Shown: one piece after another, positions 4,695 to 63,741 of the stretch
Layout: every line of letters starts with the position of its first letter
How positions within the stretch are numbered: position 1 is the stretch's first letter
DNA from: Ascidiella aspersa
Lineage: Eukaryota
Direction: 5' to 3'
Assembly (NCBI GenBank): GCA_963924565.1
Contig: OZ004615.1
Location: 20,274,001-20,338,000 of the forward strand
DNA: 64,000 nucleotides
Position numbers and translations under genes: made by a program
The notes under the pieces: model-generated
What the model was told of the DNA's origin: nothing
What the model saw: the letters and a program-made list of their open reading frames with translations, nothing else
The model's database searches: none

Positions 4695-4881
4695 CTGTAG
4701 CCGATATCGTGACATACCGGGTTTTGTTTTGTCCTTTCCCGGTGAAGTTAGAAAATATTGGAATCCAAAAAAACTGTAATATCTTGTCTGGTTTAAAATA
4801 AATATAACCCCATCACCTTAAAGTAACCGCACTTTTGTGGATGAAATTATTACAAATCAATGAACATAACTTAATCATGGA

Positions 4882-4991
4882 TATACTATGCACGGATCCG
4901 AATGTAGTTTGATAATAAATTGCACAACCAAAAAGGTCGAGTATATCGACGTCATCTTAACTAAGACGTTTTGATACGAGCTTTCAGTTAA
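4882..4991 (-). mobile_element. Decayed family 2 hammerhead/pLTR copy (internal deletion)
   Basis: Shares actatgcacggatc...ataataaatt...ccaaaaaggtcgagta with 49501-49570. Minus strand reads taactgaaagctcgtatcaaaacgtcttag. Confidence 0.55.
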
Positions 4992-45800: not shown

Positions 45801-48800
45801 GGAGGAAGCATTGAGAGCCAACGAGTTCGAGTAATGCTTATTTTTAAACTGATGGAACTATGTGAAAAATGCAGGACGATCATTAGCCGTTTAAAAGAAT
45901 AATATACATTTCTAATATAGGATGGGGTATTTAGGTACTATATAAAGATATATTGGATTGAAATCTTGACCAGCTTTCGCACCACCGTTCTTCGTTAGGT
46001 AAAAGTAATAAAAATAGAAAAAAAAATCTACTTTGATCTGATGAAGCACGCTTGTGTAAAATCTTGTCAAGATTTTAATACAATGTGTCTTTATATAGTG
46101 CCACCTGATTACCCTATTTAGAGTCAGTCAAAAATGGCCATTTACAAAGATTGTTATAGGATGTTGAGCTCTAAAAACATAAGGCTAATATAGTTTAAAC
46201 CTCTAGTAATGCAAAAAGTTTCAACAAACTACTGTGATAGTGTCATCCCGTAAGTCACATAAGCCAAAATGACCATCAATAAACTTGTGGCTAACACCAG
46301 TATAGGTAACAAACGCGAAACACGGTATATGTGTGTGTGTGTGTTCCACGTGCAGGTCGCAATGTCGAGGGAAGATTTTTTTTCGAGATGGAACTTACCT
46401 TTGTGACGTCACAATCCTGTGATTTGGTGAGGATCACGTGATAGCCGACGCCGAACTTGCTCTTAAGAAACACGGAAGAACCTGCGAAAACATGACGTCT
46501 AATAAAGAAATACAAGTAAATTCAAATCAACTGTTACCCGAATAGCATCTCAATATTGCAACTTAATGTTTTTGCACAAGGAAAAAATCCCATCACCACA
46601 AACTAAAACGATTTTTTAACATTCTATGGCTAATTACTACAAACGCCAAGCAAAAGCCAATTTTAATAGGAACTCTGTTTAATTCTACATTTGTTTGAAT
46701 CGAAGCGACAAAATAAGGTTTATCGTACATTGCAAGTCGGCTTGCAAATAGCAAATAAGTTTTGACGCACCGCAGGCTTTATCGTTCACAAACTGCTTTC
46801 TTTGTTTATGTTTGCAATTACTAAACATGATCTTTGAAATACCAGTCCCTGGGAATAAATTTACCTTGGAAAAATCCCCTAACTTGTACATATGATACCT
46901 TACTTGGAACAGCTATCAATTTCAATAAATGCAATCTGTACTGAAAAATCCCATCATTTATACCAGTGTTTTGCAACCTTGGTTTTTCTTTGCATAAGGA
47001 TAATAGCAAAGCTTTAGCAAAACCACCATCTTTACTAATTTTTTCACAAGTGAACATAAAGCATAATAAATCGGCATTAATAAACGCAAATTTAGCTCAT
47101 ATAAGTCATGTCTTCGTCTTGCTTCTGCGACTTCGTGTTACTTTTTAAAGAAATCTTGCTCAAGACCAATCTCATTAATCTTACCGCGTGAACAACTGTA
47201 GTCGGCGAACCAATTTTGGGTCACCACACACAAATTTAAAGCACGTGCAGTGAGCTTTTATTAGTTGAATCCCTAAAAATAAGGACGTAAGGTGTACAGA
47301 ATGGGGACTAGAGATGTACCTGCGCATCTGAGCTTGCCGTCGGCCATGATGGCGATCCGATCTCCGAGGAGGTCGGCCTCATCCATGAAGTGCGTGGAGA
47401 GGAGCATGGAGCACTTGCTCCTGTACTCCTGCACAACCTCCCAGATCGCTCGTCGAGCGGCCGGGTCCATCCCCGAGGTCGGCTCGTCCAGGATCACATA
47501 CTAAAAAGCAGTTTTGCAACTTACCATAAGTCAATGACCAGTTACTAGACTTGAGTGCACTTAAGTCACTGTATTCAAGTGACTTGATTTTACTTAAGAA
47601 GAACCAGGTGACCATGTATAAAGACAAATTTTATTGAATTCTTTACAATCTTTCGTACAAACGCGCTTCATCAGCACTGCTTCAATACAATTTGTCTTTA
47701 TACAGTGTCACCCGATTCCTCTAATTAGAATCAGACAAATACGGCCATTTACAAAGATTGATTTTACTTGAGTCTTTTGAGCAAAATGACTTGACTTGAT
47801 TTAAGTCTTTTAAACAAATGACTTGTTTTAAAATAAAATGTTTTCGTCAGTGAATTTTTGATAAAATTGAGTTATTTATATTAATTTTCGTACATAAAAC
47901 AATTTGTTTGCTATATGTTGCGTTTCAGTTATATTCTTAGTTCAATTAATGCTTACAATCGAACGGGTTTAACAATTTTATTTTATGACAACGGTTTGAC
48001 TTGGAATTGACTTGCTCTAATCCATTTTTAGCTGTTGAGTGATTAAATAAAGACGATTGGTCGAAACCGGTCACTTTTCCGTGCCAAGAAAAACCTCAAC
48101 TATTCAGGTCTCCAACAGCGTGTGATCGTTTTTAAGACTAGTCAAGCTGAATACAAAACAAGTGTTTGTAAATCAGAAAGGCAATTCCTCAGCTGGTATG
48201 TTATAATAGCACGTACCTTAGGGTAGGCGACCAGGGCGATCCCTACAGATAGTTTTCTCTTCATTCCTCCAGAGAGCTTGTGCGACTGAACGTGACGCTT
48301 GTCGTCCAGCTTTAGAGTTGACGTCATATCGGCGCCGCAGTTCTGCGCCTCCTTTTTGTTGTAGCCCTTCAGCTGCGGGAGGATAAAAAGGCACCTGGGT
48401 CACACTTACGTAAGAATGACGTATAAGCACCTGCGTCACACTTACGTAAGTAAACCGATTTGGTTTCGTCGGAAGGCCGGAAATATGGAACGGAATATAC
48501 AATTTTCTTGTTTCAGGGAAAAAAAGTAATTCACACTTACGTAAGAATCTCCAGCACCGCATTACAGCCCAACCTAAGTTGAACTTTTACTTATGTAGAT
48601 ATTTATCTTGTGTGTGACTGCGTGTTGATATATATGTCATTGTCACATGTTCGAAAGAAATTTAAATCTTTGAATTACAGGGGAAGTCCGGTAAAAACTC
48701 AAGTGCAAAGTTGAATAATATTTTTTTCATGAAAAGCGCACCTGTGTCGCATTTACGTAAGCAAACCGATTTCGATTATTTATTTTCCGGATGACCGGAA

Positions 48801-51800
48801 ATTTAAACGGAATATACAATATTCTTGTTTCGGGGGGAAAATAGTACAAGAAGTTTTAAGACATTTTCCGCATTTTTTTTTCAATTTCTGTCCAAACCCG
48901 TTACATTATATAAAGCCAACAGTTTTTCGCAAGCAATCTAAAGAAAGTTGAATCTTGGAATCACAGGGGAAGTCCGGTTAAAACTCAAGAGCAAAGTTGA
49001 GTAATATTTAAAAAAAAAAAACGCACATGCGTCACACTTACGTAAGCAAACCGATTTCGTTTATTTTCGTACCGGTTTGGAAGGACAGAAATTTAAACGG
49101 AATATAAAGCATACTTGTTTTGGGGGGAAATGTAGGAGAAGCTTTACGACTTGTTTCGTAATTTTTTAATTTTTATTTTCTATGCAAACCCGTTACTTTT
49201 TATAGAGCCACCTTTTTCACAAGCAATCCCGAAGTTGTTTGATTCGCCTTGCTGGCAAAAGTAACAGACTTAGCGTGTAAAGAACTTGTTAAGCTTTTCG
49301 ACATAAAAAGCCACGAAAAAAAACAATTAAGTTGCTGCGACTTATGACATTTTTCTCTTTTTTATATTTTTCCATTTTTTTGTTTTTCGTCATTTGTTTT
49401 CTACTCGAATCGCTAACACCACAATAGAGCACAACCTCCGTTGAACTTTGATATATTTAGATTTTTACTCAAAGTTGAATAATTAAGCATACACTTGGGT
49501 ACACTATGCACGGATCTGTAATGTAGCTTAATAATAAATTTCAAAGCCAAAAAGGTCGAGTAGATCGACACCATCTTTATTAAGACACACTAACATACTA
49601 ATCACACTAACTGAAGATGATACAAGTTCGTATCGAAACGTCTTAATCAAAATGCTGTCGATCTACTCGACCTTTTTGGCTTCGAAATTTATTATTAAAC
49701 ATATACTTTTTTTCATAAAGTATTAGAAATAAGAAAAATCTGCAAAATTTTAGCTATATGCTAAATGCAATTTCTTCGTGGCATGGTTTTAAGCGTGTAT
49801 AGGCGTACCATATAACTACGTAATAAATCGAACACATTCTCGGCATAAATGATTTATGGGCTCGGCGAAGACTGACGTTTGAAATCTAGTTAAATTTGCG
49901 TCGTAGTCGATAGATATGGGAGAGGGTCCGAGAAAGTTACGCCGTCTTCGACTTAAGTATTTTTAATTTTGTGTTTTGTTACTACATGAACCCTTCAATA
50001 GCCTTGCAAAAATGTAACAAAATTAAAAAAACAACGCTTAAAACGATAATTGCCAAAATATAGCCAAAGGTGCACTTGTGATTAGTTTTGTTGCGTTATA
50101 CATAAAAACACGCAATAAAAAACGTCTTTAAATCACTCGTAAGCGATGAATGGCCTTCATTCGTACGGCAGTTATAACCCGGCATTTTAGGCGGAAGATA
50201 ATTGTAAGGTAGTCGGGTAAATTTCGCCGGCAGATGCTCACTTTGAAATGCGCATTTATAGGTATTTTACATAGTTTTAATTTCTCTTACTTCGGTCTTT
50301 AATAAATAAATAATAACAACGAAGGTTGTAGTTTACTCTTTTGTTATTGGTCCATTTTTGCAAACAAAACTCCCAAATTGTCAAGTTTTCGAAAATATAG
50401 GTCTATTGGAGTTCGTATTTCGTATTTATTGTTTTCCTTAGATTTATTGTCATGCATCTAATACCCAAAAACAAAACAAGCCTAAACGGCCGTTAAAACA
50501 GAAAAAAATACCTCATTGTTAAGATTGCATGTAAAACGCTACAAAACTATTGTATGTTTTTTTACATACCCGCGCGAAAAAGTAAAGGTGCTCTTCGACT
50601 GTGAGTTTGTCGAAGAGAATGTTGTGCTGCGGGCAATATCCAAGCGACTGGCGGACGCCGCGCAGGTCCTTTGTGATGCTATGACCGAGCACCGAGGCCT
50701 CTCCGGAGGTGGGTGGGAAAAAACCTGTAAAGGTGGATTTTTTACTGCAAAGGTGTACTCCAGTGATTCTCAACCTTTTATGGCCAACGGCACCCCTCAA
50801 AAATAATAAATAGATTTTTGGCGCCCCGACCGGAATTTTTTGAGTATTTTACTGAAATAATGGAACTGATACAATACAATCAACTTAAAACATGTAGGAA
50901 AATGTAATTTGATTTCATGGTCTCTAATCGTACACAAATTGGTTTATCAAAAAGCTTACCAATGGAGCAAAAAATCAGATTCTTTAAAATTCTTAAATAC
51001 CTAATGGGCATTTATAAATGCATTACCCTTGAGTATTAGAAAATTGAGCATTAGAAATGGCACACCAGGGCGCCGCGACACCCCGATTGTGAACCACTGG
51101 TGCAGTTGATTAACTCTATCGCTTAAAGTACGATTTAAGTGATATTGATACTAAAGTCGGTAAGTTGGCAAAAGTTTTTCTATAAGATTAGTCGGCAACC
51201 TGTGGACCTTTCGTATCTGTGCTCTGGCTCCTGTGACTCAGAGACATTAAGCTCATTTTTTAAATTGGAATAAATAATTAGTGCTGTTAGTGCAACAATG
51301 CAATACCTTATTGCGTGTGTAAGATTATTGTTATTTAGGATTTATTCCGACGCGTAAAATCGTATACAAATGCTATGCTTAGTATTTTGGAGCTTGTTTA
51401 ATTTATACTATACATTAATCTTTGTTTGGTGACTATGTGGGTTGGTATCGTTGTAATTAACATTAAACGGTTTACGTGTGTATCTACAAAGCATTTGTGT
51501 TAACATATATATATAAAGCGCTAAGTTTTTGTTTTACCTAGTTAATTGATACTGTGCTATTTTTGAACGAACCGAACCAAAACATGCCACAAAAGATGGC
51601 AAAAAGTGACCGTATTTGTCTAATTATAAATTGGGTAAGTTTTCATAAGGTCAAAGTGAAAACTAACTATTTTCTACTGATGAAGCACGGACGTACGAAA
51701 GTTTGTCGAGGATTCAATACAATTAGTCTTTTTATAGTAGCCTACCACCTGGTGTCCGAAAATTTGAACATTGTTGTGAGGCAGTGGTATGGCGCCCTGT

Positions 51801-54800
51801 GCGTTGAGGCAAACGGACATTGGAACCTTGTAACGCATGCGTCTCCAGACATCACCCCATATGCGGTGGGGAATATTGACGCAACGTAAACACGTCATAA
51901 CTCAATTGGCGCCCGGTGACCTATCGATCCATTGCCAGTGCTACGCGCGTTACAAGAAATGTTTGTTACATATGCAAATAGCACAGCGGAACAAAGAATA
52001 CAGGAATCGTGTTTTGAGTAATGCGCAGCATCCTTGTAAAGAAGAGGCCTTTAAATTACGCGCTAAGCATCTATTTTTTATACACAGCCATTGTTGTATG
52101 TGCTTGAGTTCACCATTATAGCATGTGATGCTGTTTTGAATAGAGCTCTGGCATTTTTGACTTCTATTATGCATCACACTTCCGTTAATTTAGTCTACTG
52201 CGGTTGGACCAGTGGTTTTCAATTAGTGTCAAGACGCAAAATAACCTGTAAACAGAGACATTTCGAAGCGAATTATATTTTATTGGCACGGAGAGCTTTA
52301 AAGGCTTTTCAAAGCCGCTGTGTGTCGTGACGATGAAGCATGCCTTTTTGCACATAAAGCAATTTGCTGGCTCTACATTGCCTTTTTGTTGTTTTAAGTT
52401 AAGGTATTGCTTAAGCATAAATCAGTCAGGAACGTGTGACTTTTATGACAAAGACTTGACTTGCTATTTATTCAAAAAGACTTGACTCGGACTTAAGTTA
52501 TTTTACAAATGACTTCATTCGGACTTCAGTAAAATGATTTAAAACTTCGTAAAACACGCCAAAAATTTTCACCCTTCAAAAGGCAGCACTGCGAGGACAT
52601 CATCGTAAAATTTATCGGTCTATATAGCTTACCGGTCAGCATCGACATGGTTGTGGTCTTGCCGGCGCCGTTGTGGCCCAACAGAACGTTGATCTGTCCC
52701 TCGTACATGTTAAAGTTTAGGCGGTCCACAGCCACTTTCTCTTTGCCGTTGGTCTTGAAAACCTGCGTCGCGTAAACAGACAGACGCGTTATACTTGGCC
52801 GCGTGGTTAAAGGCATAGCGAACATTTAGGGTTACACAACCTAGGAGGCTATTTTTAAGGGGGTGTCTTTGGAATGGTAGATTTGGCAAATGATTTGCAA
52901 AAATAGCAACATTAGGAATGTTAACCGTTTCAACTGGACTAGAAGACTTGAATGTCTTTATTCGAATGAACTATAAATTTTTCATTCGAATAAAGACATT
53001 CAAGTCTTCTAGTCCAGTTGATTTACTGATTCATGCCATACTATACAATTTTTTACAAATATGAAGCATTTTGCAGGATGGCGAATAAACAAGATTGTCT
53101 TATAGTGTTCTTAATGCTTAAGGGTGTATAGAGATATTTTAGATTTTTGAAGATTTTTTTACCAGTAAGCTTCTTGATTCCTCTGTTTGTGTATGAGCAA
53201 TAAGTAAAGAATACATTTTTTCCTGTATTGAAAACAGTTGGTGCCTGTTAGATGGCAGCTTCGCCAGGTCTGTCCTTGCGTCTCGCACGGTGGCCTCTGA
53301 TAGCGACAATACAATTTTTCTTATAAAGATTGCTTTCTAGTTACTACCGATTAATTCGAATCTTATCTAATGGCAGATCTTTTACGGAACCTGACTTTGC
53401 ACGAAAATACTATTAAAGACACCTGCTGGTTTCGAATGCCTCCCCAAAGATTTCCGCCAGACTAATGACGTACTTCTCCCTCCCAGGCGGACATATTTTC
53501 TCCTGAATAATAGGCTATCCTTTAATACATTTTTATTTAGCCTTGGCGGGCATCCGATTTTGCCTTGTTATTGCTCTTAGGTTAGGACTGTTGGCACTGT
53601 ACTCGTTGTTGGTAAAATAAATACGAGACCCTGGGAAAGCGGTTTGATTTTTGAAGTCCCAGTCAAGTCATAATTAGAGCAATTAAATTTCAAGTCAAGT
53701 TCTTTTTATACAAATTACACGTTAAGCTATTAAAATCGGAACTCGTCCGATTATTTATCAGCAATACCCTAACTAAAAACTACCAAAAACGCAATATATG
53801 GCAAGCAAAATGTTTTACGTGCTCAAATTAAAATAAATAACCTAGTTTTACTAAAATGCTTATTGAAAATACTTCATTTTATCTGAATTCGTTTGTCTAA
53901 AAGACTTAATTTAAGTCCAGTTATTTGCCGAAAAGACTAAGGCAAGTAATTTTGCCCAAAAGATTAAGTCAAGTTAAGTCATTTGAAAACAGTGACTTAC
54001 TTCAGTCATTACAACTGATTTTTGCAACAGGAAATATTCAAATTATTTCAGTACAGGTCAAATATAAAATATATATTTTGGCAATCCAATTTTACTAGCT
54101 GCGGCTTCAGCTTTTTCACGCTTTGCCATTTATCAAATGTATAGAAGTAATACGGCCATATAAACAATTGACCGACCAACATCTTGTCATGTCTCAGTTA
54201 CCACGTTAAATTATGTCGCGTAAACAAAGAAAAAGCGAAATAGTTTTCCTTAAATATCACCTGCAGCTCTTATTTATTTAAAATCTTAATAATTAAGTAT
54301 TAAATTCTGTTTCGAGAAGAACCCGTTTTTCGTTCACTTATGTCCCATGTTAACTCAAGCCACTGAATGTAGTTTTACTTTTTCATTCATAGTTACCAAC
54401 CACACAATATACTGGTGCCGTTATCGTTGGGCAATACGACTCTAGAACGGCTTGATCACAGAATACACACTGTGTATAATGTATGTTTTACATGAATGCC
54501 AGTTTTAAAGTTTGTCGATATATATTTCGGTGTTATTCTCATCAAATGACTAACTTTGATCTTGACAGAAAAGCAAGACCAAGATATCTCCTTTATAACA
54601 AATTGTCTTCTTTATAACAATTTGGTTTGTGATTAAAATGACATTCTCCAGGTTGTGTATTTCTTATACATGCGCCTTGCTTTCAATTATTTATGCACAA
54701 AATTTTGCAGAGAGGGCGTCGCGAAAAGACACGCCAAGTGTTTGTATCACGACCACTATATGGGAGAAAGAGCAACGCACATTTGCAAAGGCGGACTTGA

Positions 54801-57800
54801 GAAAATGCATTCCCGGCCTACAGGTTCAAACGCGTATGGTTAACGAGTCCTGCTCTGTTTTTTTGAGTGGTAAACGCCAAACAGAAAATATAGGCACGGT
54901 GTCAGGCATTGATCCTAATACACAAAATAAATATTTCAGCCTTGTGCCAATGAAAAACAAACAACAGATTCTTAGTTGACGAGAACAATTCGTGCGGCTT
55001 TAAAGAGTAATTTACTAGAATATATAAAGTTGGCTGACATTGATCGCAAAACGACAAATTTACTAGAATGCTAATAATAATGGCTGATTGAAGTACTTTT
55101 TTAAGTTTTGTGCTAGTATATACTTTTTGATATTATTTGAGTGGAGAATACAATCAATAGCTATACGTTAGCGTCGAATGTATCAGAAAATAAGCAAATG
55201 AATGCAAATTTATTTTTTTAACTGGGCAATGGACGTGCCAAAAATGAAAAGAAAAACCTATTTGTCAAACTACAACGTGTTTTTGCTCAAGATTGAAGAT
55301 CGATTCTATTTCTTCTTTCATAACTTTTTCTTTCTGATAAAGCAAAGCACTCTATCTTCAAACAATCTTTGTAGATGGCCATATTTGTCTAATTCTTAAT
55401 ATGGTAATCAGGTGGCACAAGTCAGAATTTGACCTAATGAAGCACGGTTGTGCGAAAGCTTGTCGAGAATGGACCGATATATCGGTTTACCGACAATATC
55501 GGCCGGTATTACTTTGGCCGATATTTTAGTACGAAAATATGATAGGATTTTACCTGCCCCAGAAAATTCTGGATTTAGCATCACGCCAAGGTAATATGCA
55601 AATAAAAAGTTAAATAATAATCAATAAAGGTTAATAAACTAAAACGTTATTTGCATTTTATTTTCAATTAATTCAAGTTTTGAACATTTCTTAGGTATAT
55701 AAAAAAAATCGGTATCGGGTATCGGTTATCGGTTGGCAAAATTGTAAAAATAGGGTATCGGTTCAAAAAAGTGATATCGGTCGATCTCTACTTTATATCG
55801 CGCCACCTGATTACCACATCTCCCAACAGAGCGAAAAAAAAACATCCTTCTCCTACCTTAGTCAGATCCTTGATCTCAACAACTCGTCGCAGCTGGCTCG
55901 GCTCCTCCTCAAAGAACTCCTTTGCTACGTTACCGTTGATGCAACCTCCGTTCTGGATGCCGGTATCCCCGTCGCATCCTCCCTCCACATCCTCGATCAC
56001 GGAGAGGATCGGACTAGGCTTCTTTACCGCTCCGGTCCAGTAGCTCTTCTGTTTTGTAAAAGTTCAGAAATGCTCAGAAAACTATAGGGAAGACGTCTGC
56101 CTCGTGCCAACGCCTTATGGAATGGTACACCGAAAAGCCATCGCAGACTTGGCGAATGATCCAAGCAAGGCAGGCTAGAGAAACAACTAGCCTGCAGTGA
56201 GGTTCGAACTCACGACCTCCGGCCATACTGGGACCCAATATAGATACGAAAGCCGTAATCGTTGGTCAAAAAGCAGCTTCCGAGGGCCTAGATCACAGTT
56301 GTTATTAAAACACATATGTGTGTGTGTTTTTCATTATATAATCGGACATACCAACTCGAGCATGCTATTCTATTCTGCATGTACTAAGTCAACTTTGGGC
56401 CTTTGTTCAAGAAAAATCCGATGTCGATCTATACCCTATAGGCGCCCAGTAAACGAAATATATTTTGACCTGTATAGTCGGTAATTGTACACTGTACAGT
56501 TAGCCTAGCTGTACAGTATACATGCGTTTTAATTTTTAGAAGTTACATTGCAATCGGCAACGTTTATACTTGTCTGGGGAAGTGTGTCGTTATCCCGAAT
56601 AAATACTGACAAACCCACTTGTGTTGCCTACACTGCGAATTGTGTGGTGGCACAATATATATTACAGAAACGAAGGACCAAACCTAAAACAGTGCAGAAT
56701 ACGATATGTGCTTTAAGAGCTATCTTTTATTTTGTGTAAGGATTATTATGCAGACCAAGTTGCTATTGTTGGCCAGTGGCTCCTAACGAGTTCAGTGTTA
56801 AAATAAGGTTCGTTTTGCGATACGTTCCTTACAGTCTATATGGTATTTTGTCAGTACTTTCCAGTCGGTGTTCTGTTCAAGAGAACACGTGCTGTAAGCA
56901 ACACTGTATGACAACAGACCCTGACTAAGGTTTGTAAAAAAATTTTGAGCAATTTTATATAACTCACAGCATAATACTTGAAAAAGTAGGTTTAGCGAGA
57001 CTATAATGAAGCGCTACAATAGAAAAAATATTGAATTCCACACAAGTGGGTAAAAAAGTTTTGTAATTTTCGTAATAGATTATTTAAAGGATCTGTCTGA
57101 TTAAGCATTTTATAGTTTCACCTTTTTCTTACATACAAAATAAAACAGTGTTAACACTTGCACACTTGAACAAAACAACCCCAGTTGAAAAGGTATAGCA
57201 AGGCTATTTCGTGATACGCGCCAAAGCAAAGCGAAGGTTCATGAACTGGGCAAGGTGGGTAATTTGACTTACTGTGAATGGGAAATACCAGCGCTTCGGA
57301 ATGCCATATTCTCCAGGCCACACTCCCTCGATATAAACAGCGAGCATCATATACAGCACAGCGTCCAATATCAGCATCAGAAACACCTGCCATCGTCAAG
57401 AAAACAAAATCAGTCGCCCCGTTATTTTTCTGAATGCGACTGGTTTTAAAGGGTGGCGCACAAGACGCGAAAACTTTAAAATGGAATATAAAATTATTTT
57501 TAGTGCGATTGTAGGGGAGACGACTGGGCCAATGCGAGTGTTAGAGTTCCTAAAATAGACATTAACAGTGTTTGGTTAGGTGTTTTGAGCGAAATGGTCT
57601 ATTGAATCTTTTTAACGATCCCTTGACTTAGCTGTAAAATACTGCGTTTATTATTTTTCCGTAATGACATGGTTGTGACTTTTTGTAGCAGTCTTAAAAA
57701 ATGGGTAAGAATATGTCGATTTATAATGTTCACCGAGTCCAGCAAGTTTGCGAAATTTCGACTGAGTGACAAACATATTTCAAGTGGCGAAAAAATATTT

Positions 57801-60800
57801 ACCACACTTCAATTTGTTCTGAAACATTGGTTTGGAGCCAACACTTTTTTGTCTAGTTGAGAAAACTAGGATAAAAGGCGTTTTTTTATTTTTTTCTACA
57901 AAACATACCTTTGAAAAGCACTGTTATAGATTATAACAAAAAAACTCAAAGTTTAAAAACCCGAGCAATACCAGAATCAGACATTTTTAAAGGAATATAT
58001 ATTTTGCCTAACACTCGCTGCCAATGGTTTTGGATTCCACAAAGATACACCATGTCATAGATTGTTATATGCGCGTGATAATTTACCTGTAGCATGGTAA
58101 AGTTGTCGTCTACCGTTACCGAGCTGTTTAGATTGCTCCATTGAAGACCAGAACCTTGGAAATATGAAGTTCTTATTGAATGCAGACTAATTGAAAACAC
58201 TTTTCATCACCCGACAAAAAGAAAAAATCAAGTATTTTTAGAACCTTGAAAAGATAAAATTGTCATTGAATGCAGACTTATTGAAAACACTTTTCATCAC
58301 CCGACAAAAAGAAAAAATCAAGTATTTTTAGAACCTTGAAAAGATAAAATTGTCATTGAATGCAGACTAATTGAAAACACTTTTCATCACCCGACAAAAA
58401 GAAAAAATCAAGTATTTTTAGAACCTTGAAAAGATAAAATTGTCATTGAATGCAGACTTATTGAAAACACTTTTTATCACCAAACAAACAAAAAAACTGA
58501 AATATTTTTTTAGCGCTATAGAAAACCATTATATTAGGCCAAACACCTGAAACAGCAGAAGATGGAACGAAATTCCGTCGACTAATTACGGGCATTTCCA
58601 ATTCTCCGAAGTCTAATTAATTTCACGTCTTAACCCGGAAATGTGTTACAACGAGTCTCGCTAATTAAAGGGTCGGTCGATACGATAAACCGTTAATTGA
58701 GGACAATCTACTTCCAAAAAATAATGCTAAGCCGGCGAAAGCAAACCTTTTCCCTCGAACATTCCGATCAACTGACAGCCGTTGGCCATGGCTACGTTGG
58801 AAAGCAGGCAAGACACCACCTTAACGGCCAGGCTCAGCTGGTCGTAGCTGTTCTCCATAAAGAGATACGGCATGTAGGTCAGACCGTACAGCACACCGCC
58901 GGCCGCTGCGCCTACATTGGCTGCGAAAGAATTGGATGGAAATAAACGAAACGTCGTTCACTGTAGCTTTGTCGCAATGGAAGAGTCCAGCCCAGGTGTG
59001 GGCAATTATTTTTAACATTAAGGCGCCGCATGAAAGACACAAAATGTCTTGGCGGGCCGGATTGAAAAGGGGATTTGAAATACACATAAAATAAACTAAA
59101 GTGTGGCTCCTTTGTAACGATATCTATAAATATTTTAGTTTAGATAAGCTGGTAAGAGTATGGGAATAAGTGAAGATATCTTGCTTGTATTATTCATTCA
59201 ACAAAGATTCCAAAAGTACAAAAAGTTTTACAAAAAGTATGCCGCGGGCCGTAGTTTACCCAGGTCTGGTCTATAGCTGCTAGGTATATGTCAAATCTTT
59301 TTGAGCCAGTGCTAAAACGCAATGCATATAGACTATAGTGGTAGTAGCGGTACCAGTCCAATAATAAGGTGGTATTGGTACTGTTTAACCACGTCTATTT
59401 ACCCTCTTCGTCCATGGTTTAACGCTAAGACTCACTTTGTTAAAGCTAAAGCTGATTTTGGCGAAACTACCACATTTGAAGGTTAATATTTTTATTAATT
59501 CGGTACAAAAATATTGTCTATTGCGTTTGGATAGGACGGTAGGGGAATTTCGAGTGTCAACTTCTAAAATTCAATGCAACTTCTCCAAAATTAAATAGTT
59601 TGTATAGCTAGGCTAACACGTAGCTATAATTGGTACAACTACCTGACTACAGCATTCAGGTCGAAACTTTATTTATTAGTTTGGCTAGGGTGACCAGTAC
59701 AGAAGAACATGTAGAATTGAGATGTCACCCTTCCCATAAGGCGTTACAGCATGAAGCAATAATCAATAACGGACGTCTCCCGAAGTGTGTGCGTTCCGAG
59801 TCGGTCGTGCCATTCACCCGACGTTTGACAAGTTCCAAGAACTTTTCTGTCACCAAGAAGCCTGTCACTGCTTTACGACATAGATGGCACACAGTCCGAA
59901 ACTAATGACGTGCGTTTGACAATATTTGATTTTCGCCTTATCACCTATCAGCATTTGAGAGATATACTGAATGCTCGTTGACTGTTTTTTTCTTACTTTT
60001 TGGCATGACTTAATAATAATGGACCGCTTAAATCATGCTTTTAACTTAAAAAAATGGTTTTAAATCGCCAAATAAGTGAGAAAAATTCTTGATAAATTGG
60101 AAAATTCTTAATAATTCCATTTAAGGTTAAATTTAATAACAGTTGTAAAAATTGAATTAAAGTCACCATGTCACAAACAGAGCCCCAAAACACTGCATAA
60201 TAATGTTCCAGGTCACGGCAAGATTAAAAAGAATGAAAATTAATCGAAGACAAACTTATTTTAAACCCCCAAATTTCAGCCGCACATTTTGCGAATTGCA
60301 AAACAAACAAAAAAAATTTAATAGAAAATGCATTTTTATACAAATTCGCACAAATTCTTTGATTTGACCGGCTACCAGAAAAACACAAGACATGTGCCAA
60401 GCCTAAAAGCTTCCTTATGTCAAAACCCGGCAATTTAAATAGTTTTTTTCCACGAACCACAATCGATTTTAACACAATGGCGAACCGGATTACAGAAACC
60501 CCCGCGCGAAGCACAACAGCTAAGCGTGCCTTTGTGTTGCTTGAAGTATACTTATGCAAAATACACCAGTACCACGTATCCTTGTCATTCTAAATGTATG
60601 GATTATATTCACTAAATTCTCTATCAAGTGATAGGATCTCTATAAATAGGAACGGCAATAACTGGTAACTTAAGAAAACGAATTCACATTGTGCTTTGTA
60701 AAATACTTGAACACTATTTGGCCTTAACCTAGCAGCGGGTCGGCCATCATATGATATCAACGCTTTCACTAATTAGTATCAAGACGCATGTGGACATATT

Positions 60801-63741
60801 GCTGGACTTAAAACTTTCTATCGCCTTTACCAGGGTTTGTGCTTCTGCTGTGTGCATTTCAGTTGACCCTTACTTTGACCTGATGAAGCACGGTTGTACG
60901 AAAGCTTGTCGACATTACAATACAATTTGACGTTCAGAGTGCCACCTGACTTCCTGATTCATATTTACATGCAAGACACAAGGCCAATGGCATAGGCGCC
61001 GAACGTGGGTGTGTAGAGAGTTTTTAGATGCCCTGGATTTCTCCTAGAGCGTCAAAGCGCCCTGGAATTCAACCAAGTTATCAATAAACGCTAATTTATG
61101 TAGCACAGTGTGAACATAAAGTTTTAAAAGGCGAAATGGTTGGCTCAATGATAACCGATAACAATTGTTATTTAAGAGCTCACATTTTTTATCTAATTAA
61201 AAATCAATTTTGCACTGTCTAGTCTAGAAAATGACGCCCTGAAATTTTAAAAGTTCGCCGCCTATGGATTAAAAGTTACCTTTGGAGAAGAATACCGAGA
61301 TAAGAAAGGCCAGGTTGATTGTGGCGGCGGCAAAGAGAATAAGGAAGACGAAAATCACGGTCGCGTCACTGTTGGTCAACACACTTCCGTAGCGCGTCTG
61401 TAAAAAAAGTGGCAATGATATATAGATCAGTGTTTCTCAACCTTTTTTCGCGGCTACCCAAACTATGAGCGTTCGTAGGTATAACAGTAGGGTGTATCTT
61501 TATAGAATCCAAAACCATCGGCAGCAGGTTTTAGCCAGTCGATCACTGCTCCGCTGACGCGTATATTAACAAGTAAAAGTCACAGTTAAAAACAGGAGTA
61601 AAAACAGGATCAGACGTTTTGTTTAAAGGAAAATATATTTCGCCAAGGTGTAACAGCGAAACCTTGGCGATCCAATTTATTTTCAATGAATTATTTTAAG
61701 CAAATACAACACAAGTGATTAGCATTTATTGTAAGTTTAATTAATATGAGCTGTATCTTCGTTTTGTTTTTCGCTAATTGCTCGGAATCAATCTCAATAA
61801 ATTTAACTATCAAACTCAGCAGTCTGCGACCCAACCAAATCAATCGGCGAATAATTTGAGGGGCCAAACTGGCTATTAAAATGAAGGTTAATGTACGGTG
61901 CAGGCAGATCGAACAACAATAAAGATGTTAATACGAAATATTCTAAATATCATGTACTCTCAGATCCTGAATACCGTAATTTTACTGACAATAAGAAACT
62001 TTCCAAACAATATTTAGGCAAAAACACATATCAGAAAATTCTATTTCAATAAGGGACTGACGATGCCAGTAAAAGCGAAAAATATATTCCTTTATAAAAA
62101 AAGTCTGCGCGGGCTTTTAAACTTGAGAGTTTTATTGTCAATATACGCGTCAGCGAAACAGTAATCGACAAGCAGAAACCGGCTCACAATGATTTTGGAT
62201 TCCATAAAGATACGCCCTTTTAAACATATCAGCAAAGATACTTAAATAAGGAAATGACGATGCCAGTATAGGCGAAATATATCTCCTTTAAAAAATGCCT
62301 GATCCTGGTTTTACTCAGGTTTTTAAACTTTGAGTTTTATAGTTTGTATACGCGTCAGCGGAACAGTGATCGACAAGCAGAAACCTGCTGCAAATGTTTT
62401 GGATTCCATAAAAATACAACCTTTTAAATATCAGCAAAAATATTTTAGATCCGCCTACCGGTATTTTGTAAAAGGCTGCCATAAACACGCAGGATATGGC
62501 GACGAAGATGAGATACTTGAGAAACCAGGCGAGCCAGTGCAGCCAGTTGGACAGACCCATCATCATCATGTATTCCTACACAAAGAAGCCAAATTACAGA
62601 ATTTTAGCTGAAATTGGTAGTTGAGGGGTATAGAAAGTATTTATATAACCCTTGCGGTAGCAGACTTACTAAACAATTGGTTTAACATTTAAACAAAACT
62701 AAGCTTTTCACAAATAAAAACTGTGAAAAAAATGTCAAATTTCCTGTAATATTTTTTGGTGCAAAATATTTTTTGTTTTAGATTTTGTTAGACACTTGGA
62801 AGTCGAATTAAATTAATTGGAGTGACTAACTTTTCTTAAAGGTCTAGGTCAGGGATTCTTAAACTTTTTTTACCGCGCACCCCTAAAATTTTATTTTACC
62901 TGGCGTGGACCACGATAGGCGAGAAATTTCCATAATGACGTCATAAATTGACGTTACAATACAAATAGACCTCAGAAATCTGCCGATTTCAGTACAAAAA
63001 ATGTGAAAGTGTATTGGAGCCAACATTCAGTGCAAATCGTTTTAATTTTAATTAAAGTTATTTTAAAAATTTATTAGTTTTTAAATGTATACTACTGTTT
63101 CCATTAGGCCTTCATGGACCCCCTAAAACTAGTTCATGAACCCCCAAGGGGTCCATGGACCCCAGTTTAAGAACCCCTGCTCTAGGTCAACCTGCATATG
63201 TTTTAAAATAAAGAATCTTTTCTAATAATCACGTATTAACCTTCATCTTTAGTTCTTTTTCGTGGACAACACTTTTGACAATAAGCAGGGCCGTGTAGAA
63301 AAAGCTGAGCATAATAAGAAGTGGAAGAGTCCTTTGAATAGCCACTGAAATTTGAAAAAGTAACACGATTTAAAAAATAAAATTTTTGCATTCATGTCAA
63401 AATAATGAATTTGGCTCAAATAAGTTTATCTGTGTTTTGCTTATTAGTCTTTTGACCTAAATTTGTGGCGGAATTTTTATGGAAAAAAGAGCTGAGATTA
63501 ATGGTGAAAATAACGGCCCAAATAGACATAAAAAGCGACATTAAACTTATGAACAGATCCGTATATAGTGTTCCAAAGTGCTGAGAATTAGGTATTTGAA
63601 CAAATAACCATTCAAAATAGATACTTATAAAATTGTCAAAATACATACTTATAAAATTGTCTTCCAAGTAAGGTGGGTATGGGTATCGCTTGAGCGCAAT
63701 TGAAGTTTGCAGATTTTCATTTTTTGCTAAAACTCCAGCCA
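30884..63741 (-). CDS. ABCA3: ABC transporter subfamily A, full transporter (ABCA3-like); 31 exons in window, 5' end beyond the window
   Basis: Exons 5'->3': 63649-63741, 63241-63344, 62459-62575, 61280-61397, 58747-58920, 58087-58154, 57273-57386, 55857-56048, 52633-52762, 50570-50724, 48217-48372, 47320-47500, 46399-46481, 45593-45789, 44456-44598, 43383-43489, 42857 (or 42869)-42965, 42194-42298, 40226-40354, 39074-39260, 38483-38687, 37424-37637, 36044-36196, 35637-35830, 35385-35516, 34550-34750, 33788-33975, 32963-33133, 31622-31806, 31209-31297, 30884-31024 (TAA). NBD1: [42 protein letters not shown]2: [46 protein letters not shown]-type motifs [35 protein letters not shown]. Subfamily A is secure; exact orthology to ABCA3 is less so. 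Confidence 0.9.
34978..35100. repeat. Tandem repeat, 47-bp unit x~2.6
   Basis: aaaattggtaaactcgtgc recurs at about 34978, 35025 and 35072. Confidence 0.85.
38766..38880 (+). mobile_element. Decayed family 2 hammerhead/pLTR copy
   Basis: tgaaaga-g-GATAC aagttt GTATC-GAAA-GG-TC-TTA followed by ...ctttttggctttgcaatt...tattacagatccgt, homologous to 49500-49700. Confidence 0.55.
40383..40783. mobile_element. hAT-type MITE (TAGAGATAGACCG family)
   Basis: TIR tagagatagaccgata / tatcggtcgatctcta; TSD gttaaatg/gttaaaag. A further copy lies at about 55465-55790. Confidence 0.8.
41460..42190. repeat. Tandem repeat, 144-bp unit x~5
   Basis: gtgccttt at 41488, 41632, 41776, 41920 and 42065; inner copies are nearly identical. 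Confidence 0.95.
43943..44078 (+). mobile_element. tRNA-derived repeat copy
   Basis: gcctgtgtagctcagttggtagag...agttcgaacctcactgcacgctagttatttttctagcctgccttgcttg. Confidence 0.65.
46033..46155 (+). mobile_element. Penelope-like pLTR remnant with hammerhead motif, family 1 (GAAA->AAAA core mutation)
   Basis: TTGAT-CTGATGA-A-GCAC gctt GTGT-AAAA-TC-TT-GTCAA plus tail ...aatacaatgtgtctttatatagtgccacctgattacc...ggccatttacaaagatt. Confidence 0.65.
47600..47760 (-). mobile_element. Penelope-like pLTR remnant, family 1 hammerhead flanked by an inverted copy of its own tail
   Basis: Minus strand reads CTGATGA-A-GCGC gttt GTAC-GAAA-GA-TT-GTAAA (about 47642-47674). Inverted arms: ggtgaccatgtataaagacaaattttattgaa / ttcaatacaatttgtctttatacagtgtcacc. 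Confidence 0.65.
48390..49230. repeat. Diverged tandem repeat, ~290-310-bp unit x3
   Basis: gcacctgcgtcacacttacgtaag..aaccgattt...aacggaatata recurs at about 48427, 48738 and 49023. Confidence 0.75.
49500..49700 (+). mobile_element. Penelope-like pLTR remnant, family 2: intact minimal hammerhead (49607-49646) between 59-bp inverted arms
   Basis: TAA-CTGAAGA-T-GATAC aagttc GTATC-GAAA-CG-TC-TTA. Arms 49528-49586 and 49640-49698 match at 55/59 positions. Confidence 0.75.
50761..51099. mobile_element. hAT-type MITE (diverged)
   Basis: Termini cagtgattctcaa / ttgtgaaccactg; degenerate TSD gtgtactc/gtgcagtt. Confidence 0.55.
51595..51757 (+). mobile_element. Penelope-like pLTR remnant, family 1 hammerhead
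   Basis: CTGATGA-A-GCAC ggac GTAC-GAAA-GT-TT-GTCGAG at 51677-51710, with tail caatacaattagtcttt...ccacctg and an upstream inverted tail fragment (gaccgtatttgtctaatt). Confidence 0.6.
52930..53021. repeat. Perfect 41-bp inverted repeat with 10-nt loop
   Basis: tcaactggactagaagacttgaatgtctttattcgaatgaa-ctataaattt-ttcattcgaataaagacattcaagtcttctagtccagttga. Confidence 0.95.
55363..55466 (+). mobile_element. Penelope-like pLTR remnant, family 1 hammerhead (CTAATGA core mutation), preceded by inverted tail
   Basis: TTGAC-CTAATGA-A-GCAC ggtt GTGC-GAAA-GC-TT-GTCGA at 55429-55466. The segment 55363-55418 is approximately the reverse complement of the tail at 46098-46152. Confidence 0.65.
56135..56232 (-). 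mobile_element. tRNA-derived repeat copy (5' truncated)
   Basis: Reverse complement contains ggaggtcgtgagttcgaacctcactgcaggctagttgtttctctagcctgccttgcttg...gtctgcgatggcttt. Confidence 0.65.
58150..58490. repeat. Tandem repeat, 90-bp unit x~3.8, overlapping an ABCA splice acceptor
   Basis: gaaccttg at 58151, 58241, 58331 and 58421. Confidence 0.92.
60875..60912 (+). ncRNA. Minimal type I hammerhead ribozyme motif, family 1, core intact
   Basis: TTGAC-CTGATGA-A-GCAC ggtt GTAC-GAAA-GC-TT-GTCGA. Stem I TTGAC/GTCGA, stem II with one mismatch, palindromic AGCU at stem III. Followed by the family tail (caatacaattt...gtgccacctga). Confidence 0.75.
60991..61266. mobile_element. MITE (CATAGGCGC family), second copy
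   Basis: cataggcgccgaac ... gttcgccgcctatg; internal sequence homologous to 24937-25261. Confidence 0.7.
61489..61644 (-). mobile_element. Inverted partial copy of the family 3 unit
   Basis: Reverse complement reads ggcgaaatatattttcctttaaac...tatacgcgtcagcggagcagtgatcgac...ttttggattctataaagatacaccct, matching the 62028-62445 units. Confidence 0.65.
62028..62445 (+). mobile_element. Tandem ~197-bp units, each carrying a minimal hammerhead (family 3; retrozyme/pLTR-like)
   Basis: Unit 1: AAGGGA-CTGACGA-T-GC cagtaaaa GC-GAAA-AATA-TA-TTCCTT (62051-62092). Unit 2: AAGGA-aATGACGA-T-GCC agtata GGC-GAAA-TATA-TC-TCCTT (62248-62288). The rest of the units align (tatacgcgtcagcg..acagt.atcgacaagcagaaacc...ttttggattccataaa). 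Confidence 0.7.
62850..63179. mobile_element. hAT-type MITE (CAGGGGTTCTTAAACT family, opposite orientation)
   Basis: TIR cagggattcttaaact / agtttaagaacccctg; TSD gtctaggt/ctctaggt. Confidence 0.85.

What the first reader, a model, noticed from the sequence alone, without database searches (positions are those of the whole stretch)
46033..62445. Three distinct families of minimal hammerhead-ribozyme retroelements (Penelope pLTR / retrozyme-like) populating ABCA introns
Seen: about ten copies of the pattern stem I-CUGANGA-(one extra nt)-stem II-GAAA-short palindrome-UH-stem I'. Family 1 consensus TTGAC CTGATGA A GCAC ggtt GTGC GAAA GC TT GTCGA (46033, 47674 on -, 51677, 55429, 60875). Family 2 TAA CTGAAGA T GATAC aagttc GTATC GAAA CG TC TTA (49607; decayed at 38766 and about 4960 on -). 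Family 3 AAGGA CTGACGA T GCC agtata GGC GAAA TATA TC TCCTT (62051, 62248). The families share only the catalytic core; their stems differ in sequence yet still pair. Established: minimal type I hammerheads with a palindromic stem III (AGCU, ACGU, AUAUAU) that cleave as dimers are carried by pseudo-LTRs of Penelope-like elements and by tandem metazoan retrozymes. Inference: this genome hosts at least three non-autonomous ribozyme-bearing retroelement families that ORF or TIR-based annotation would miss. No RT or GIY-YIG ORF is present in the window.
Basis: partly seen in the sequence, partly recalled or inferred. Interest (0 to 1): 0.9.

Follow-up and report, generated by a model that had tools for sequence, protein, structure and literature searches.

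The report
Hammerhead-bearing end pieces of Penelope-like retrotransposons
The short ribozyme-like repeats in the introns of this ABC-transporter gene are real, but they are mostly dead end fragments left by Penelope-like retrotransposons, a link first described in 2014, so the finding is correct in outline and ordinary.

Summary
The window holds pieces of three high-copy repeat families (at least 1,400-1,900 first-look candidates each). Their genome-wide copies encode a minimal type I hammerhead: CUGANGA, one bulged base, helix II, GAAA, a palindrome (AGCU, ACGU or AUAUAU), then H and helix I.

A strict descriptor finds 56 such motifs in 338 kb of window plus fetched loci, against 0 in 20 shuffles. 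In the window only one copy passes it (49606-49648). One more is near-intact (60874-60913). The others carry changes at core or stem positions. Rfam has no match for any of them.

They are not a new element class:
- Family 1 runs straight on from a GIY-YIG endonuclease ORF (L025). A 98% identical copy elsewhere also holds the RT domain.
- Family 3 follows RT (L071) and GIY-YIG (L077) ORFs.
- Family 2 has only one coordinate coincidence with an RT-like ORF.

All three show the textbook Penelope-like insertion signature:
- variable target duplications of 8-15 bp;
- 5' truncation;
- an adjacent inverted 5'-truncated copy with a variable inner junction;
- occasional head-to-tail dimers;
- two alternative 3' ends (the "tail").

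Element ends never coincide with the ribozyme cut site. RNA reads show neither cleavage ends nor back-joined (circular) forms.

Verdict: new members of a known kind (Cervera and de la Peña 2014; Craig 2021; Frangieh 2024). Other first-stage notes on this genome describe the same swarm elsewhere.

The parts
45934..46013 (-). Family 1 inverted 5' arm of a head-to-head insertion. Holds a dead hammerhead remnant at about 45964-46004 (core CTAACGA, G5 to A).
   Evidence: (I4, I14)
46029..46151 (+). Family 1 direct unit with the long 3' end (...CAAAGATT). The hammerhead at 46033-46073 is dead (G12 to A, helix III no longer a palindrome). A probable 9-bp target duplication TATAGGATG flanks the composite.
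47597..47674 (-). Family 1 direct unit (short 3' end) on the gene's sense strand. The core is intact, but helix II and helix I are weak and GAAAGATT has lost the palindrome.
47683..47758 (+). Inverted, 5'-truncated family 1 arm (unit positions 58-133, no hammerhead) paired with the 47597-47674 unit.
   Evidence: (I13, D8)
49495..49586 (-). Family 2 inverted arm, 5'-truncated 3 nt before the cut site and carrying the long 3' tail. It forms the left half of the 59-bp inverted repeat.
   Evidence: (I6)
49602..49698 (+). Family 2 direct unit (short 3' end) with the only strictly intact minimal hammerhead in the window (49606-49648).
51607..51738 (+). Family 1: a small inverted arm fragment (51607-51631) plus a direct unit (51677-51738). 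The hammerhead is degenerate (GAAAGTTT, poor helix I).
55365..55470 (+). Family 1: inverted arm (55365-55418) plus a direct hammerhead (55428-55470) with core CTAATGA (G5 to A). The unit breaks off at 55470.
60822..60955 (+). Family 1 5'-truncated PLE 3' end: about 50 nt of 3'UTR-like sequence, a near-intact hammerhead (60874-60913, one C.A mismatch in helix II), and the short 3' end.
61472..61644 (-). Family 3 inverted copy lacking the first ~32 nt of the unit, so it has no catalytic core.
   Evidence: (I1, I2)
62052..62222 (+). Family 3 unit 1 of a head-to-tail dimer (period about 197 nt). The core is present, but the helix II 3' strand is mutated and there is an extra A after GAAA.
62249..62430 (+). 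Family 3 unit 2 of the dimer. The core reads ATGACGA (C3 to A, dead). It ends about 15 nt from an exon of the ABC-transporter gene (62446-62575, minus strand).
57935..58051 (.). Family 3 fragments: an inverted piece (57935-58010) and a 3'-end piece (58017-58051).
   Evidence: (I3, I12, D7)
38769..38871 (+). Decayed family 2 unit (core disrupted, AGGT instead of ACGT).
4878..4983 (-). Decayed family 2 unit (deletion in core and helix II, GAAA changed to AAAA), with the long 3' tail.

Best explanation
The repeats are relics of insertions made by Penelope-like retrotransposons (PLEs). Each unit is the terminal module of a PLE. It starts 5-13 nt before a minimal hammerhead and runs on for about 45-150 nt to one of two discrete 3' ends.

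Shown here:
- Families 1 and 3 sit directly 3' of GIY-YIG or RT ORFs in longer copies.
- Those longer copies form a 5'-truncation ladder.
- Insertions carry variable target duplications.
- An inverted 5'-truncated copy with a copy-specific inner junction often lies next to the unit.
- Head-to-tail dimers occur.
- There are two alternative 3' ends.

Inferred, from the in vitro behaviour of the anole PLE (Frangieh 2024):
- The GIY-YIG endonuclease cuts both target strands, and both 3'-OH ends prime reverse transcription.
- Reverse transcription starts inside the RNA at either of two sites a few tens of nt 3' of the hammerhead. This gives the two 3' ends and the head-to-head arms.
- Severe 5' truncation, or run-off at an RNA 5' end just upstream of the hammerhead, gives thousands of ~90-200-nt units.

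The hammerhead itself would cleave only as a dimer or with protein help. It does not define the element ends.

Nearly all copies in this window are mutated, antisense to the host gene, and functionally inert intron filler.
For: Ribozyme motif:
- 56 strict hits against 0 in 20 shuffles.
- The three families share only the core. Helices I and II differ in sequence yet pair: helix II GCAC/GUGC, GAUAC/GUAUC, GCC/GGC; helix I UUGAC/GUCGA, AGGAA/UUCCU.
- Stems I and II appear in the MFE and centroid folds of good copies.

Link to PLE ORFs:
- L025 has an open frame 415-1614 with GIY-YIG at 32 bits (cut-off 22.6) that runs into the family 1 hammerhead at 1510.
- phmmer finds 7,108 relatives. The full-length ones (700-1050 aa) align at their C-termini and carry RVT_1 + GIY-YIG.
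- A copy 98% identical to L025 at C1:15311676-15313411(-) covers residues 126-705 of P0003. That span includes the RT domain and a GIY-YIG of 35 bits.
- L071 has RVT_1 (30.1 bits) about 450 nt upstream of a family 3 hammerhead. L077 has a CCHH linker + GIY-YIG ORF about 250 nt upstream of another.
- Family 2: the hammerhead with its upstream extension at C2:18014795(+) lies 384 nt 3' of an RT-like open frame on the same strand. Chance expectation is about 0.005.

Insertion signature:
- 5'-truncation ladder with a common 3' end.
- Target duplications of 8-15 bp.
- Inverted arms whose inner ends vary.
- Head-to-tail dimers (L039, window 62052-62430).
- Bimodal 3' ends about 40, 33 and 85 nt apart.

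Match to the literature: Craig 2021 (PMC8557442), Cervera and de la Peña 2014 (PMC4209133), Frangieh 2024 (PMC11167929).
Against: - No RT or endonuclease ORF lies in the window itself.
- The family 2 link to an ORF rests on one coordinate coincidence, and no GIY-YIG was detected there.
- The sharp step in copy number just 5' of the hammerhead is not explained by plain 5' truncation. It is about 15-fold in DNA word depth, and 1472 against 328 first-look candidates.
- RNA reads show no pile-up of starts there.
- The family 3 'tail' (about 85 nt) is longer than the published 30-40 bp.
- Self-cleavage was not tested. RNA reads cross the cut site without an excess of ends.
A hammerhead at both ends (pLTR) was therefore not verified.
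Confidence: 0.75

Rival explanations
1. The short units are self-propagating non-autonomous lineages (SINE-like or 'mini-PLE'). They carry only the module that the PLE reverse transcriptase recognises and are mobilised in trans. They are not by-products of autonomous copies.
For: - Short units outnumber extended copies about 5-10 fold, with a sharp common 5' end.
- None of 30 family 2 loci has a PLE ORF nearby.
- Several subfamilies of the family 1 unit exist.
- Li et al. 2026 (bioRxiv 10.64898/2026.07.22.740005) argue that animal retrozymes, monomers included, are non-autonomous PLE derivatives.
Against: - Families 1 and 3 continue without a break into 3'UTR and endonuclease ORF in longer copies.
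- Short unit L026 carries the same diagnostic bases as the autonomous-type copies L025 and L004.
- No internal promoter was identified.
- No read-start pile-up at the unit's 5' end.
Confidence: 0.18
2. They are metazoan non-LTR retrozymes. Tandem hammerhead units would be transcribed, self-cleaved and ligated into small circular RNAs, which are then reverse-transcribed.
For: - A head-to-tail dimer with a ~197-nt period at 62052-62430 and a 91-nt dimer in L039.
- Low GC, and target duplications longer than 4 bp, as described for retrozymes (PMC7229834).
Against: - The motifs are the atypical minimal variant that PMC7229834 sets apart from the canonical loop-loop hammerheads of retrozymes.
- No Rfam Hammerhead_1 match.
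- Most copies are single or head-to-head.
- Unit boundaries and dimer junctions lie at the PLE 5' end and RT-start sites, not at the cut site.
- No back-joined reads for family 1 in the RNA run.
- Both hammerheads of the window dimer are defective.
Confidence: 0.05
3. They are foldback or MITE-type DNA transposons, or chance motifs, that merely resemble a hammerhead.
For: - Family 2 looks like a 180-nt palindrome with 59-bp arms, 93% complementary.
- The loose pattern is not enriched in the window.
Against: - The inner junction of the arms differs between copies, and the arms are truncated copies of the unit itself.
- Target duplications vary in length.
- 5'-truncation ladder and ORF adjacency.
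- 56 strict motifs against 0 in shuffles.
Confidence: 0.02

Closest known systems
Minimal hammerheads (min-HHR) of Penelope-like elements (Cervera and de la Peña 2014, PMC4209133)
   Same: - Type I topology and the CUGANGA/GAAA core.
[quoted passage not shown]
- Short helix I.
- No helix III, or a short palindromic one, which implies action as a dimer.
- Thousands of mostly single copies per genome, some as opposite-strand pairs 100-700 bp apart, attributed to truncated PLEs.
   Different: - Helix II here is 3-5 bp, against 7-8 bp in the Schistosoma families described there.
- The sequences are specific to this genome.
- The U3:A8 variant was not seen in the 338 kb I held.
EN+ Penelope-like elements with C-terminal GIY-YIG (Penelope/Poseidon, Neptune, Nematis; Craig 2021, PMC8557442)
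   Same: - RT followed by a Cys-rich linker (CX2-4CxxC) and GIY-YIG.
- Heavy 5' truncation.
- An inverted 5'-truncated copy next to the insertion.
- Partial tandems.
- A tail at one end.
- The hammerhead near the 3' end.
   Different: - The clade was not determined because no reference sequences were at hand.
- The spacer between the endonuclease domain and the hammerhead is short (about 190-250 nt).
- In L025 the reading frame stays open through the hammerhead.
PAc (Poseidon of Anolis carolinensis) in vitro system (Frangieh 2024, PMC11167929)
   Same: - Two alternative RT start sites a few tens of nt 3' of the hammerhead cut. In PAc one lies about 85-92 nt from the cut. Here the long ends of families 1 and 2 lie about 85-88 nt from the cut, and the short ends 45-55 nt.
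- Both target strands are used, which fits the head-to-head arms.
- No RNA-seq ends at the cut site.
   Different: - The evidence here is genomic only.
- Family 3 ends are farther out (about 65 and 150 nt).
- No ORF start is evident inside the hammerhead: the AUG of CUGAUGA meets a stop after 26 codons in the long-tail form.
Metazoan non-LTR retrozymes (Cervera and de la Peña 2020, PMC7229834)
   Same: - Short AT-rich units with a type I hammerhead.
- Occasional head-to-tail dimers.
- Probably the same mobilising machinery (Li et al. 2026 preprint).
   Different: - Retrozymes carry canonical hammerheads with loop 1-loop 2 contacts in arrays that range from dimers to large multimers, and they are expressed as circles.
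- Here the hammerheads are minimal, the copies are mostly single or inverted, and no circles were seen.

Membership tests
Minimal type I hammerhead of PLEs (min-HHR) | Conserved core CUGANGA ... GAAA ... UH in type I order | tested here: met
   Met by the genomic majority sequence of all three families and by window copies 49606-49648 and 60874-60913. Most other window copies have a core substitution.
Minimal type I hammerhead of PLEs (min-HHR) | Helices I and II paired, with sequence changes between families that keep the pairing | tested here: met
   Helix II is GCAC/GUGC, GAUAC/GUAUC, GCC/GGC. Helix I is UUGAC/GUCGA, UAA/UUA (weak), AGGAA/UUCCU. MFE and centroid folds of L007 and L066 show both stems. 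The MAFFT alignment across families was not structurally correct, so no formal covariation count was made.
Minimal type I hammerhead of PLEs (min-HHR) | Helix III absent or reduced to a short palindrome, so that two copies must pair | tested here: met
   AGCU, ACGU and AUAUAU start at A15.1. Cofold runs could not show the dimer specifically.
Minimal type I hammerhead of PLEs (min-HHR) | Self-cleavage at H17 | not testable with these tools
   RNA reads cross the predicted cut (L025 1537/1538) with no excess of ends. This neither shows nor excludes cleavage.
Rfam hammerhead families (Hammerhead_1, _3, _II, HH9, HH10) | Score at or above the gathering threshold | tested here: not met
   No hammerhead hit at gathering scores over the whole window, nor at E up to 10 over 36000-64000. 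That these models require a helix III and loops which min-HHRs lack is my own knowledge, not tested here.
EN+ Penelope-like element | Single ORF with RT followed by C-terminal GIY-YIG | tested here: met
   Family 1: L025 GIY-YIG at 32 bits. A 98% identical C1 copy covers RT + EN of P0003 in two adjacent pieces. Family 3: RVT_1 at 30.1 bits (L071) and GIY-YIG at 22.4 bits, just under the 22.6 cut-off, with a clear motif (L077). Family 2: only one adjacent RT-like frame, so inconclusive. None in the window.
EN+ Penelope-like element | Heavy 5' truncation with a common 3' end | tested here: met
   44 copies of L025:700-1200 start at query positions from 1 to 458 and nearly all run to the 3' end of the query.
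EN+ Penelope-like element | Adjacent inverted 5'-truncated copy and partial tandems inside one target duplication | tested here: met
   Head-to-head pairs in all three families, with variable inner junctions and shared target duplications (L013, L021, L034, L051, L085). Head-to-tail dimers in L039 and at window 62052-62430.
EN+ Penelope-like element | Optional 30-40 bp tail, that is two alternative ends | tested here: met
   Bimodal 3' ends, as positions on each family's 147-215-nt query (core starts at 20, 13, 16). Family 1: 92-103 and 128-141. Family 2: 96-109 and 128-137. Family 3: 110-117 and 179-204, which is about 85 nt apart and wider than published.
EN+ Penelope-like element | Hammerhead in both flanking pseudo-LTRs of a full-length copy | not tested
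Metazoan non-LTR retrozyme | Canonical type I hammerhead with loop 1-loop 2 contacts inside tandem arrays of 150-450 bp units | tested here: not met
   The motifs are minimal and have no Rfam match. Only dimers were seen, and most copies are single or inverted.
Metazoan non-LTR retrozyme | Expression as unit-length circular RNA joined at the cut site | tested here: inconclusive
   One RNA run, about 6% of it read, family 1 only: no joints in RNA reads. Families 2 and 3 were not tested.

The most novel reading that the evidence does not exclude
The abundant ~90-200-nt units that begin just 5' of the hammerhead are a distinct product class. They would be run-off cDNAs made when the PLE reverse transcriptase binds the hammerhead-proximal module at the 5' end of its own mRNA and starts internally 45-90 nt 3' of the cut. 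If so, the hammerhead plus its downstream stretch is the minimal cis-acting unit for PLE retrotransposition. The thousands of head-to-head units would then be in vivo genomic evidence, in an invertebrate-type genome, for the two-strand, internal-initiation mechanism so far shown only in vitro for one lizard element.
Probability: 0.25. Interest if true: 0.45.

Novelty: new member of a known kind. Interest (0 to 1): 0.25.

Why it matters
The result mainly matters for annotation. Three high-copy repeat families in this 308.6-Mb genome, each with well over a thousand copies, are Penelope-like terminal fragments. ORF-based or TIR-based pipelines would miss them or misfile them as MITEs or foldback elements.

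The copies in the ABC-transporter introns are inert. Eight of ten hammerhead-bearing copies within the gene span are antisense to the gene, and the two sense copies are catalytically dead.

The genome-wide anatomy is a clean natural data set that agrees with the 2024 in vitro model of PLE integration. Its features are two discrete 3' ends, inverted arms with variable junctions, and a sharp 5' end just before the ribozyme. That anatomy could help define what the hammerhead region does for these elements, which is still unknown.

Tried and rejected
- **Rfam:** run at gathering scores (whole window) and at E up to 10 (36000-64000). No hammerhead model matches. Rfam cannot test this motif class.
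- **Conservation of the core against flanks within a family:** uninformative. Copies are uniformly 85-100% conserved along the whole unit, as expected for neutral decay from master copies.
- **RNAcofold of homodimers:** gives generic domain-swapped duplexes and cannot show the helix III dimer.
- **Thermodynamic z-scores of whole units:** not significant, 0.46 to -0.85.
- **MAFFT alignment across families:** mis-registers GAAA and the stems. I built no covariance model and made no formal pair count; the compensatory changes are read directly from the sequences.
In the window the arm ends 3 nt before the cut, and in other copies the arm ends anywhere from the cut region to the full hammerhead.
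- **U3:A8 core variant:** none in the 338 kb held.
- **Walking to full-length copies:** I used coordinates only from then on.
- **Extra searches for an ORF next to family 2:** P0078 and Pfam GIY-YIG on the genome added no link.
- **Cluster look-up of PLE relatives:** gave no useful names; one is an unnamed Caretta caretta protein.
- **RNA reads on L025:** low two-strand coverage, no ends at the cut site, none at the unit's 5' end, and no back-joins.
- **Not done:** the species was not identified (run and organism names are coded).
Full report
**Observation**

The claimed sites exist.

The loose pattern CTGANGA..GAAA is not enriched in the window: 6 matches against 2.4 expected. Rfam finds no hammerhead at gathering scores over the whole window, nor at E up to 10 over 36000-64000.

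A strict minimal-hammerhead descriptor gives a clear signal. It requires a fully paired helix II, GAAA, a palindrome beginning at A15.1, then H, then at least 4 of 5 helix I pairs. It finds 56 motifs in 338 kb of window plus fetched loci and none in 20 shuffles. All but one fall into the three families.

In the window itself only 49606-49648 (family 2) passes. The copy at 60874-60913 (family 1) fails by one C.A mismatch in helix II. Every other copy is damaged:
- G5 to A at 55428 and in the inverted remnant at 45964-46004;
- G12 to A at 46033;
- C3 to A at 62249;
- lost palindromes at 47674(-) and 51677;
- a damaged helix II at 62052;
- disrupted cores at 38769 and 4983(-).

**Host gene**

The host gene is on the minus strand. 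It has two ABC_tran matches over the Pfam cut-off. Two ABC2_membrane_3 matches fall below theirs (30.6 and 19.4 bits against 31.6). This is an ABCA-type full transporter.

Within the gene span, eight hammerhead-bearing copies are antisense to the gene and two are sense. Both sense copies are dead. The numbers are too small to test for a bias.

**Copy number and anatomy**

Each family is a high-copy repeat of this 308.6-Mb genome: 1472, 1907 and 1485 first-look candidates, all lower bounds.

Thirty loci per family show one common anatomy.
- A direct unit begins 5-13 nt before CUGANGA.
- The unit ends at one of two discrete places. The positions below are on each family's 147-215-nt query, whose core starts at 20, 13 and 16.
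  - Family 1: 92-103 or 128-141.
  - Family 2: 96-109 or 128-137.
  - Family 3: 110-117 or 179-204.
- Immediately upstream there is often an inverted copy of the same unit. It is truncated at its hammerhead-proximal end at a point that differs from locus to locus.
- The whole composite is flanked by a target duplication of 8-15 bp (for example L013, L021, L026, L034, L039, L051, L085; in the window, probably TATAGGATG around 45934-46156).

This explains the 59-bp inverted repeat around the family 2 hammerhead at 49528-49698. It is an inverted 5'-truncated copy plus a direct copy, not a fixed foldback. Its inner end does not sit at the cut site. In the window it lies 3 nt before the cut, and in other copies anywhere up to a full inverted hammerhead.

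Head-to-tail dimers also occur. L039 has a 91-nt period. Window 62052-62430 has a period of about 197 nt. Their junctions join a unit's 3' end to the next unit's 5' end, not at the ribozyme cut.

**Link to autonomous elements**

A minority of copies extend upstream.

*Family 1*
- The 120 nt upstream of the unit in L025 occur in at least 42 copies at 98-100% identity (328 candidates).
- The region 300-800 nt upstream occurs in 44 copies, which form a classic 5'-truncation ladder with a common 3' end.
- L025 has an open frame at 415-1614 with a Cys-rich linker and a GIY-YIG domain (32 bits against a cut-off of 22.6). It runs on into the hammerhead at 1510.
- phmmer finds 7,108 relatives. The full-length ones (700-1050 aa) match at their C-termini and carry RVT_1 + GIY-YIG.
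- A copy 98% identical to L025 at C1:15311676-15313411(-) matches residues 126-705 of one such protein. The match is in two adjacent pieces and covers both RT and endonuclease.

*Family 3*
- L071 has an RVT_1 frame (30.1 bits) about 450 nt 5' of the hammerhead. The endonuclease region is internally deleted in this copy.
- L077 has the thumb, linker and GIY-YIG frame (22.4 bits, just under the cut-off, but with clear GIY...YVG and Cys motifs) about 250 nt 5' of another family 3 hammerhead.

*Family 2*
- At least 40 copies carry a further 53 nt upstream at 96-100% identity.
- One of them, C2:18014795(+), lies 384 nt 3' of an RT-like open frame on the same strand. The expected number of such coincidences is about 0.005.
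- No GIY-YIG was detected there, so I treat this link as weak.

The genome holds many other PLE copies, including tandem arrays with 2671-nt and 3422-nt periods.

**Comparison with the literature**

- Cervera and de la Peña 2014 (PMC4209133) described exactly this motif class: minimal type I hammerheads with a bulged base at the start of helix II and a missing or palindromic helix III. They found thousands of mostly single copies per metazoan genome, some as opposite-strand pairs 100-700 bp apart, and attributed them to truncated PLEs.
- Craig et al. 2021 (PMC8557442) list the PLE insertion signature: heavy 5' truncation, partial tandems, an adjacent inverted 5'-truncated copy, and a 30-40 bp tail at one end.
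- Frangieh et al. 2024 (PMC11167929) showed in vitro that a lizard PLE cuts and extends both target strands. Reverse transcription starts internally at two adjacent sites about 85-92 nt 3' of the hammerhead cut. The hammerhead needs protein to cleave and is not needed for insertion, and RNA-seq shows no ends at the cut.

The long ends of families 1 and 2 lie about 85-88 nt from the cut, and the short ends 45-55 nt. This fits the in vitro picture well. Family 3 ends lie farther out.

Metazoan retrozymes (PMC7229834) are defined by canonical loop-loop hammerheads in tandem arrays that are expressed as circles. That paper explicitly sets the minimal PLE variants apart from them.

**RNA evidence**

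One 2026 RNA-seq run of the same species label, about 6% of it read, was laid on L025.
- It gives low coverage on both strands of the endonuclease ORF and the hammerhead unit (20-55 reads deep).
- No place is flagged where molecules begin or end. This holds at the predicted cut (1537/1538) and at the unit's 5' end (1501).
- No joints appear in RNA reads.
- Loose ends at 1501 and 1540 come from other, divergent copies.

So some copies are transcribed, perhaps as read-through. Neither cleavage, circles nor a transcription start was shown. This is weak negative evidence and covers family 1 only.

**What remains unexplained**

Copy number steps sharply just 5' of the hammerhead: about 15-fold in DNA word depth, and 1472 against 328 candidates. 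Plain 5' truncation does not explain this. Three readings remain open:
- run-off at the 5' end of the PLE mRNA after internal initiation;
- a strong reverse-transcriptase stop or jump;
- separate non-autonomous lineages.

Short unit L026 carries the same diagnostic bases as the autonomous-type copies, which favours by-products for at least part of family 1.

**Limits**

Hammerheads at both ends of a full element, and the partner of family 2, are therefore unverified.
- No covariance model was built, because MAFFT mis-aligned the families.
- The species is not identified.

**Verdict**

They are ordinary PLE terminal fragments, mostly dead in this window, and not retrozymes or a new class.

Noticed in passing
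window 24786-24860 (+); 43943-44080 (+) and 56133-56200 (-): A tRNA gene (Rfam 45.3 bits). Also two copies of a tRNA-like repeat: 22.4 bits, below the cut-off, with a 46-nt, 91% inverted match between the two places. These are probably tRNA-derived SINE copies.
   Followed up: no
window 52930-53021: A perfect 41-bp inverted repeat with a 10-nt loop in an intron of the ABC-transporter gene. Only sub-threshold matches to miRNA models. Probably a foldback or MITE remnant.
   Followed up: no
window 58150-58509 and 48385-49217: A 90-bp tandem repeat (about four periods, 92-100% alike) and a tandem repeat with a period of about 290-315 nt (three units).
   Followed up: no
window 62430-62446: Family 3 unit 2 ends about 15 nt from an exon (62446-62575, minus strand) of the ABC-transporter gene, so it lies right next to the splice site.
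   Followed up: partly
L025:415-1614: The reading frame that encodes the GIY-YIG domain has no stop. It stays open through the ~190-nt 3' region and the hammerhead to the end of the insertion. Homology to other PLE proteins ends at about residue 242 of the 344-aa ORF.
   Followed up: partly
G000 C9:23485620-23494973 (-) and C2:30628752-30639308 (-): Tandem arrays of PLE copies with periods of 2671 and 3422 nt. Several have open frames of about 816 aa (C9) or 293 aa (C2). Which hammerhead family they carry is unknown.
   Followed up: no
L025:1665-1976: A very high-copy repeat next to the PLE copy, with DNA word depth higher than that of the hammerhead unit. DNA contigs that leave the stretch near 1891 continue into a tRNA-like GTTCGAACCTCAC box.
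   Followed up: no
runs X3, X6: DNA runs under two other coded organism labels hold 46-66% of the words of the L025 PLE copy. Near-identical copies may therefore exist in related or differently labelled samples.
   Followed up: no
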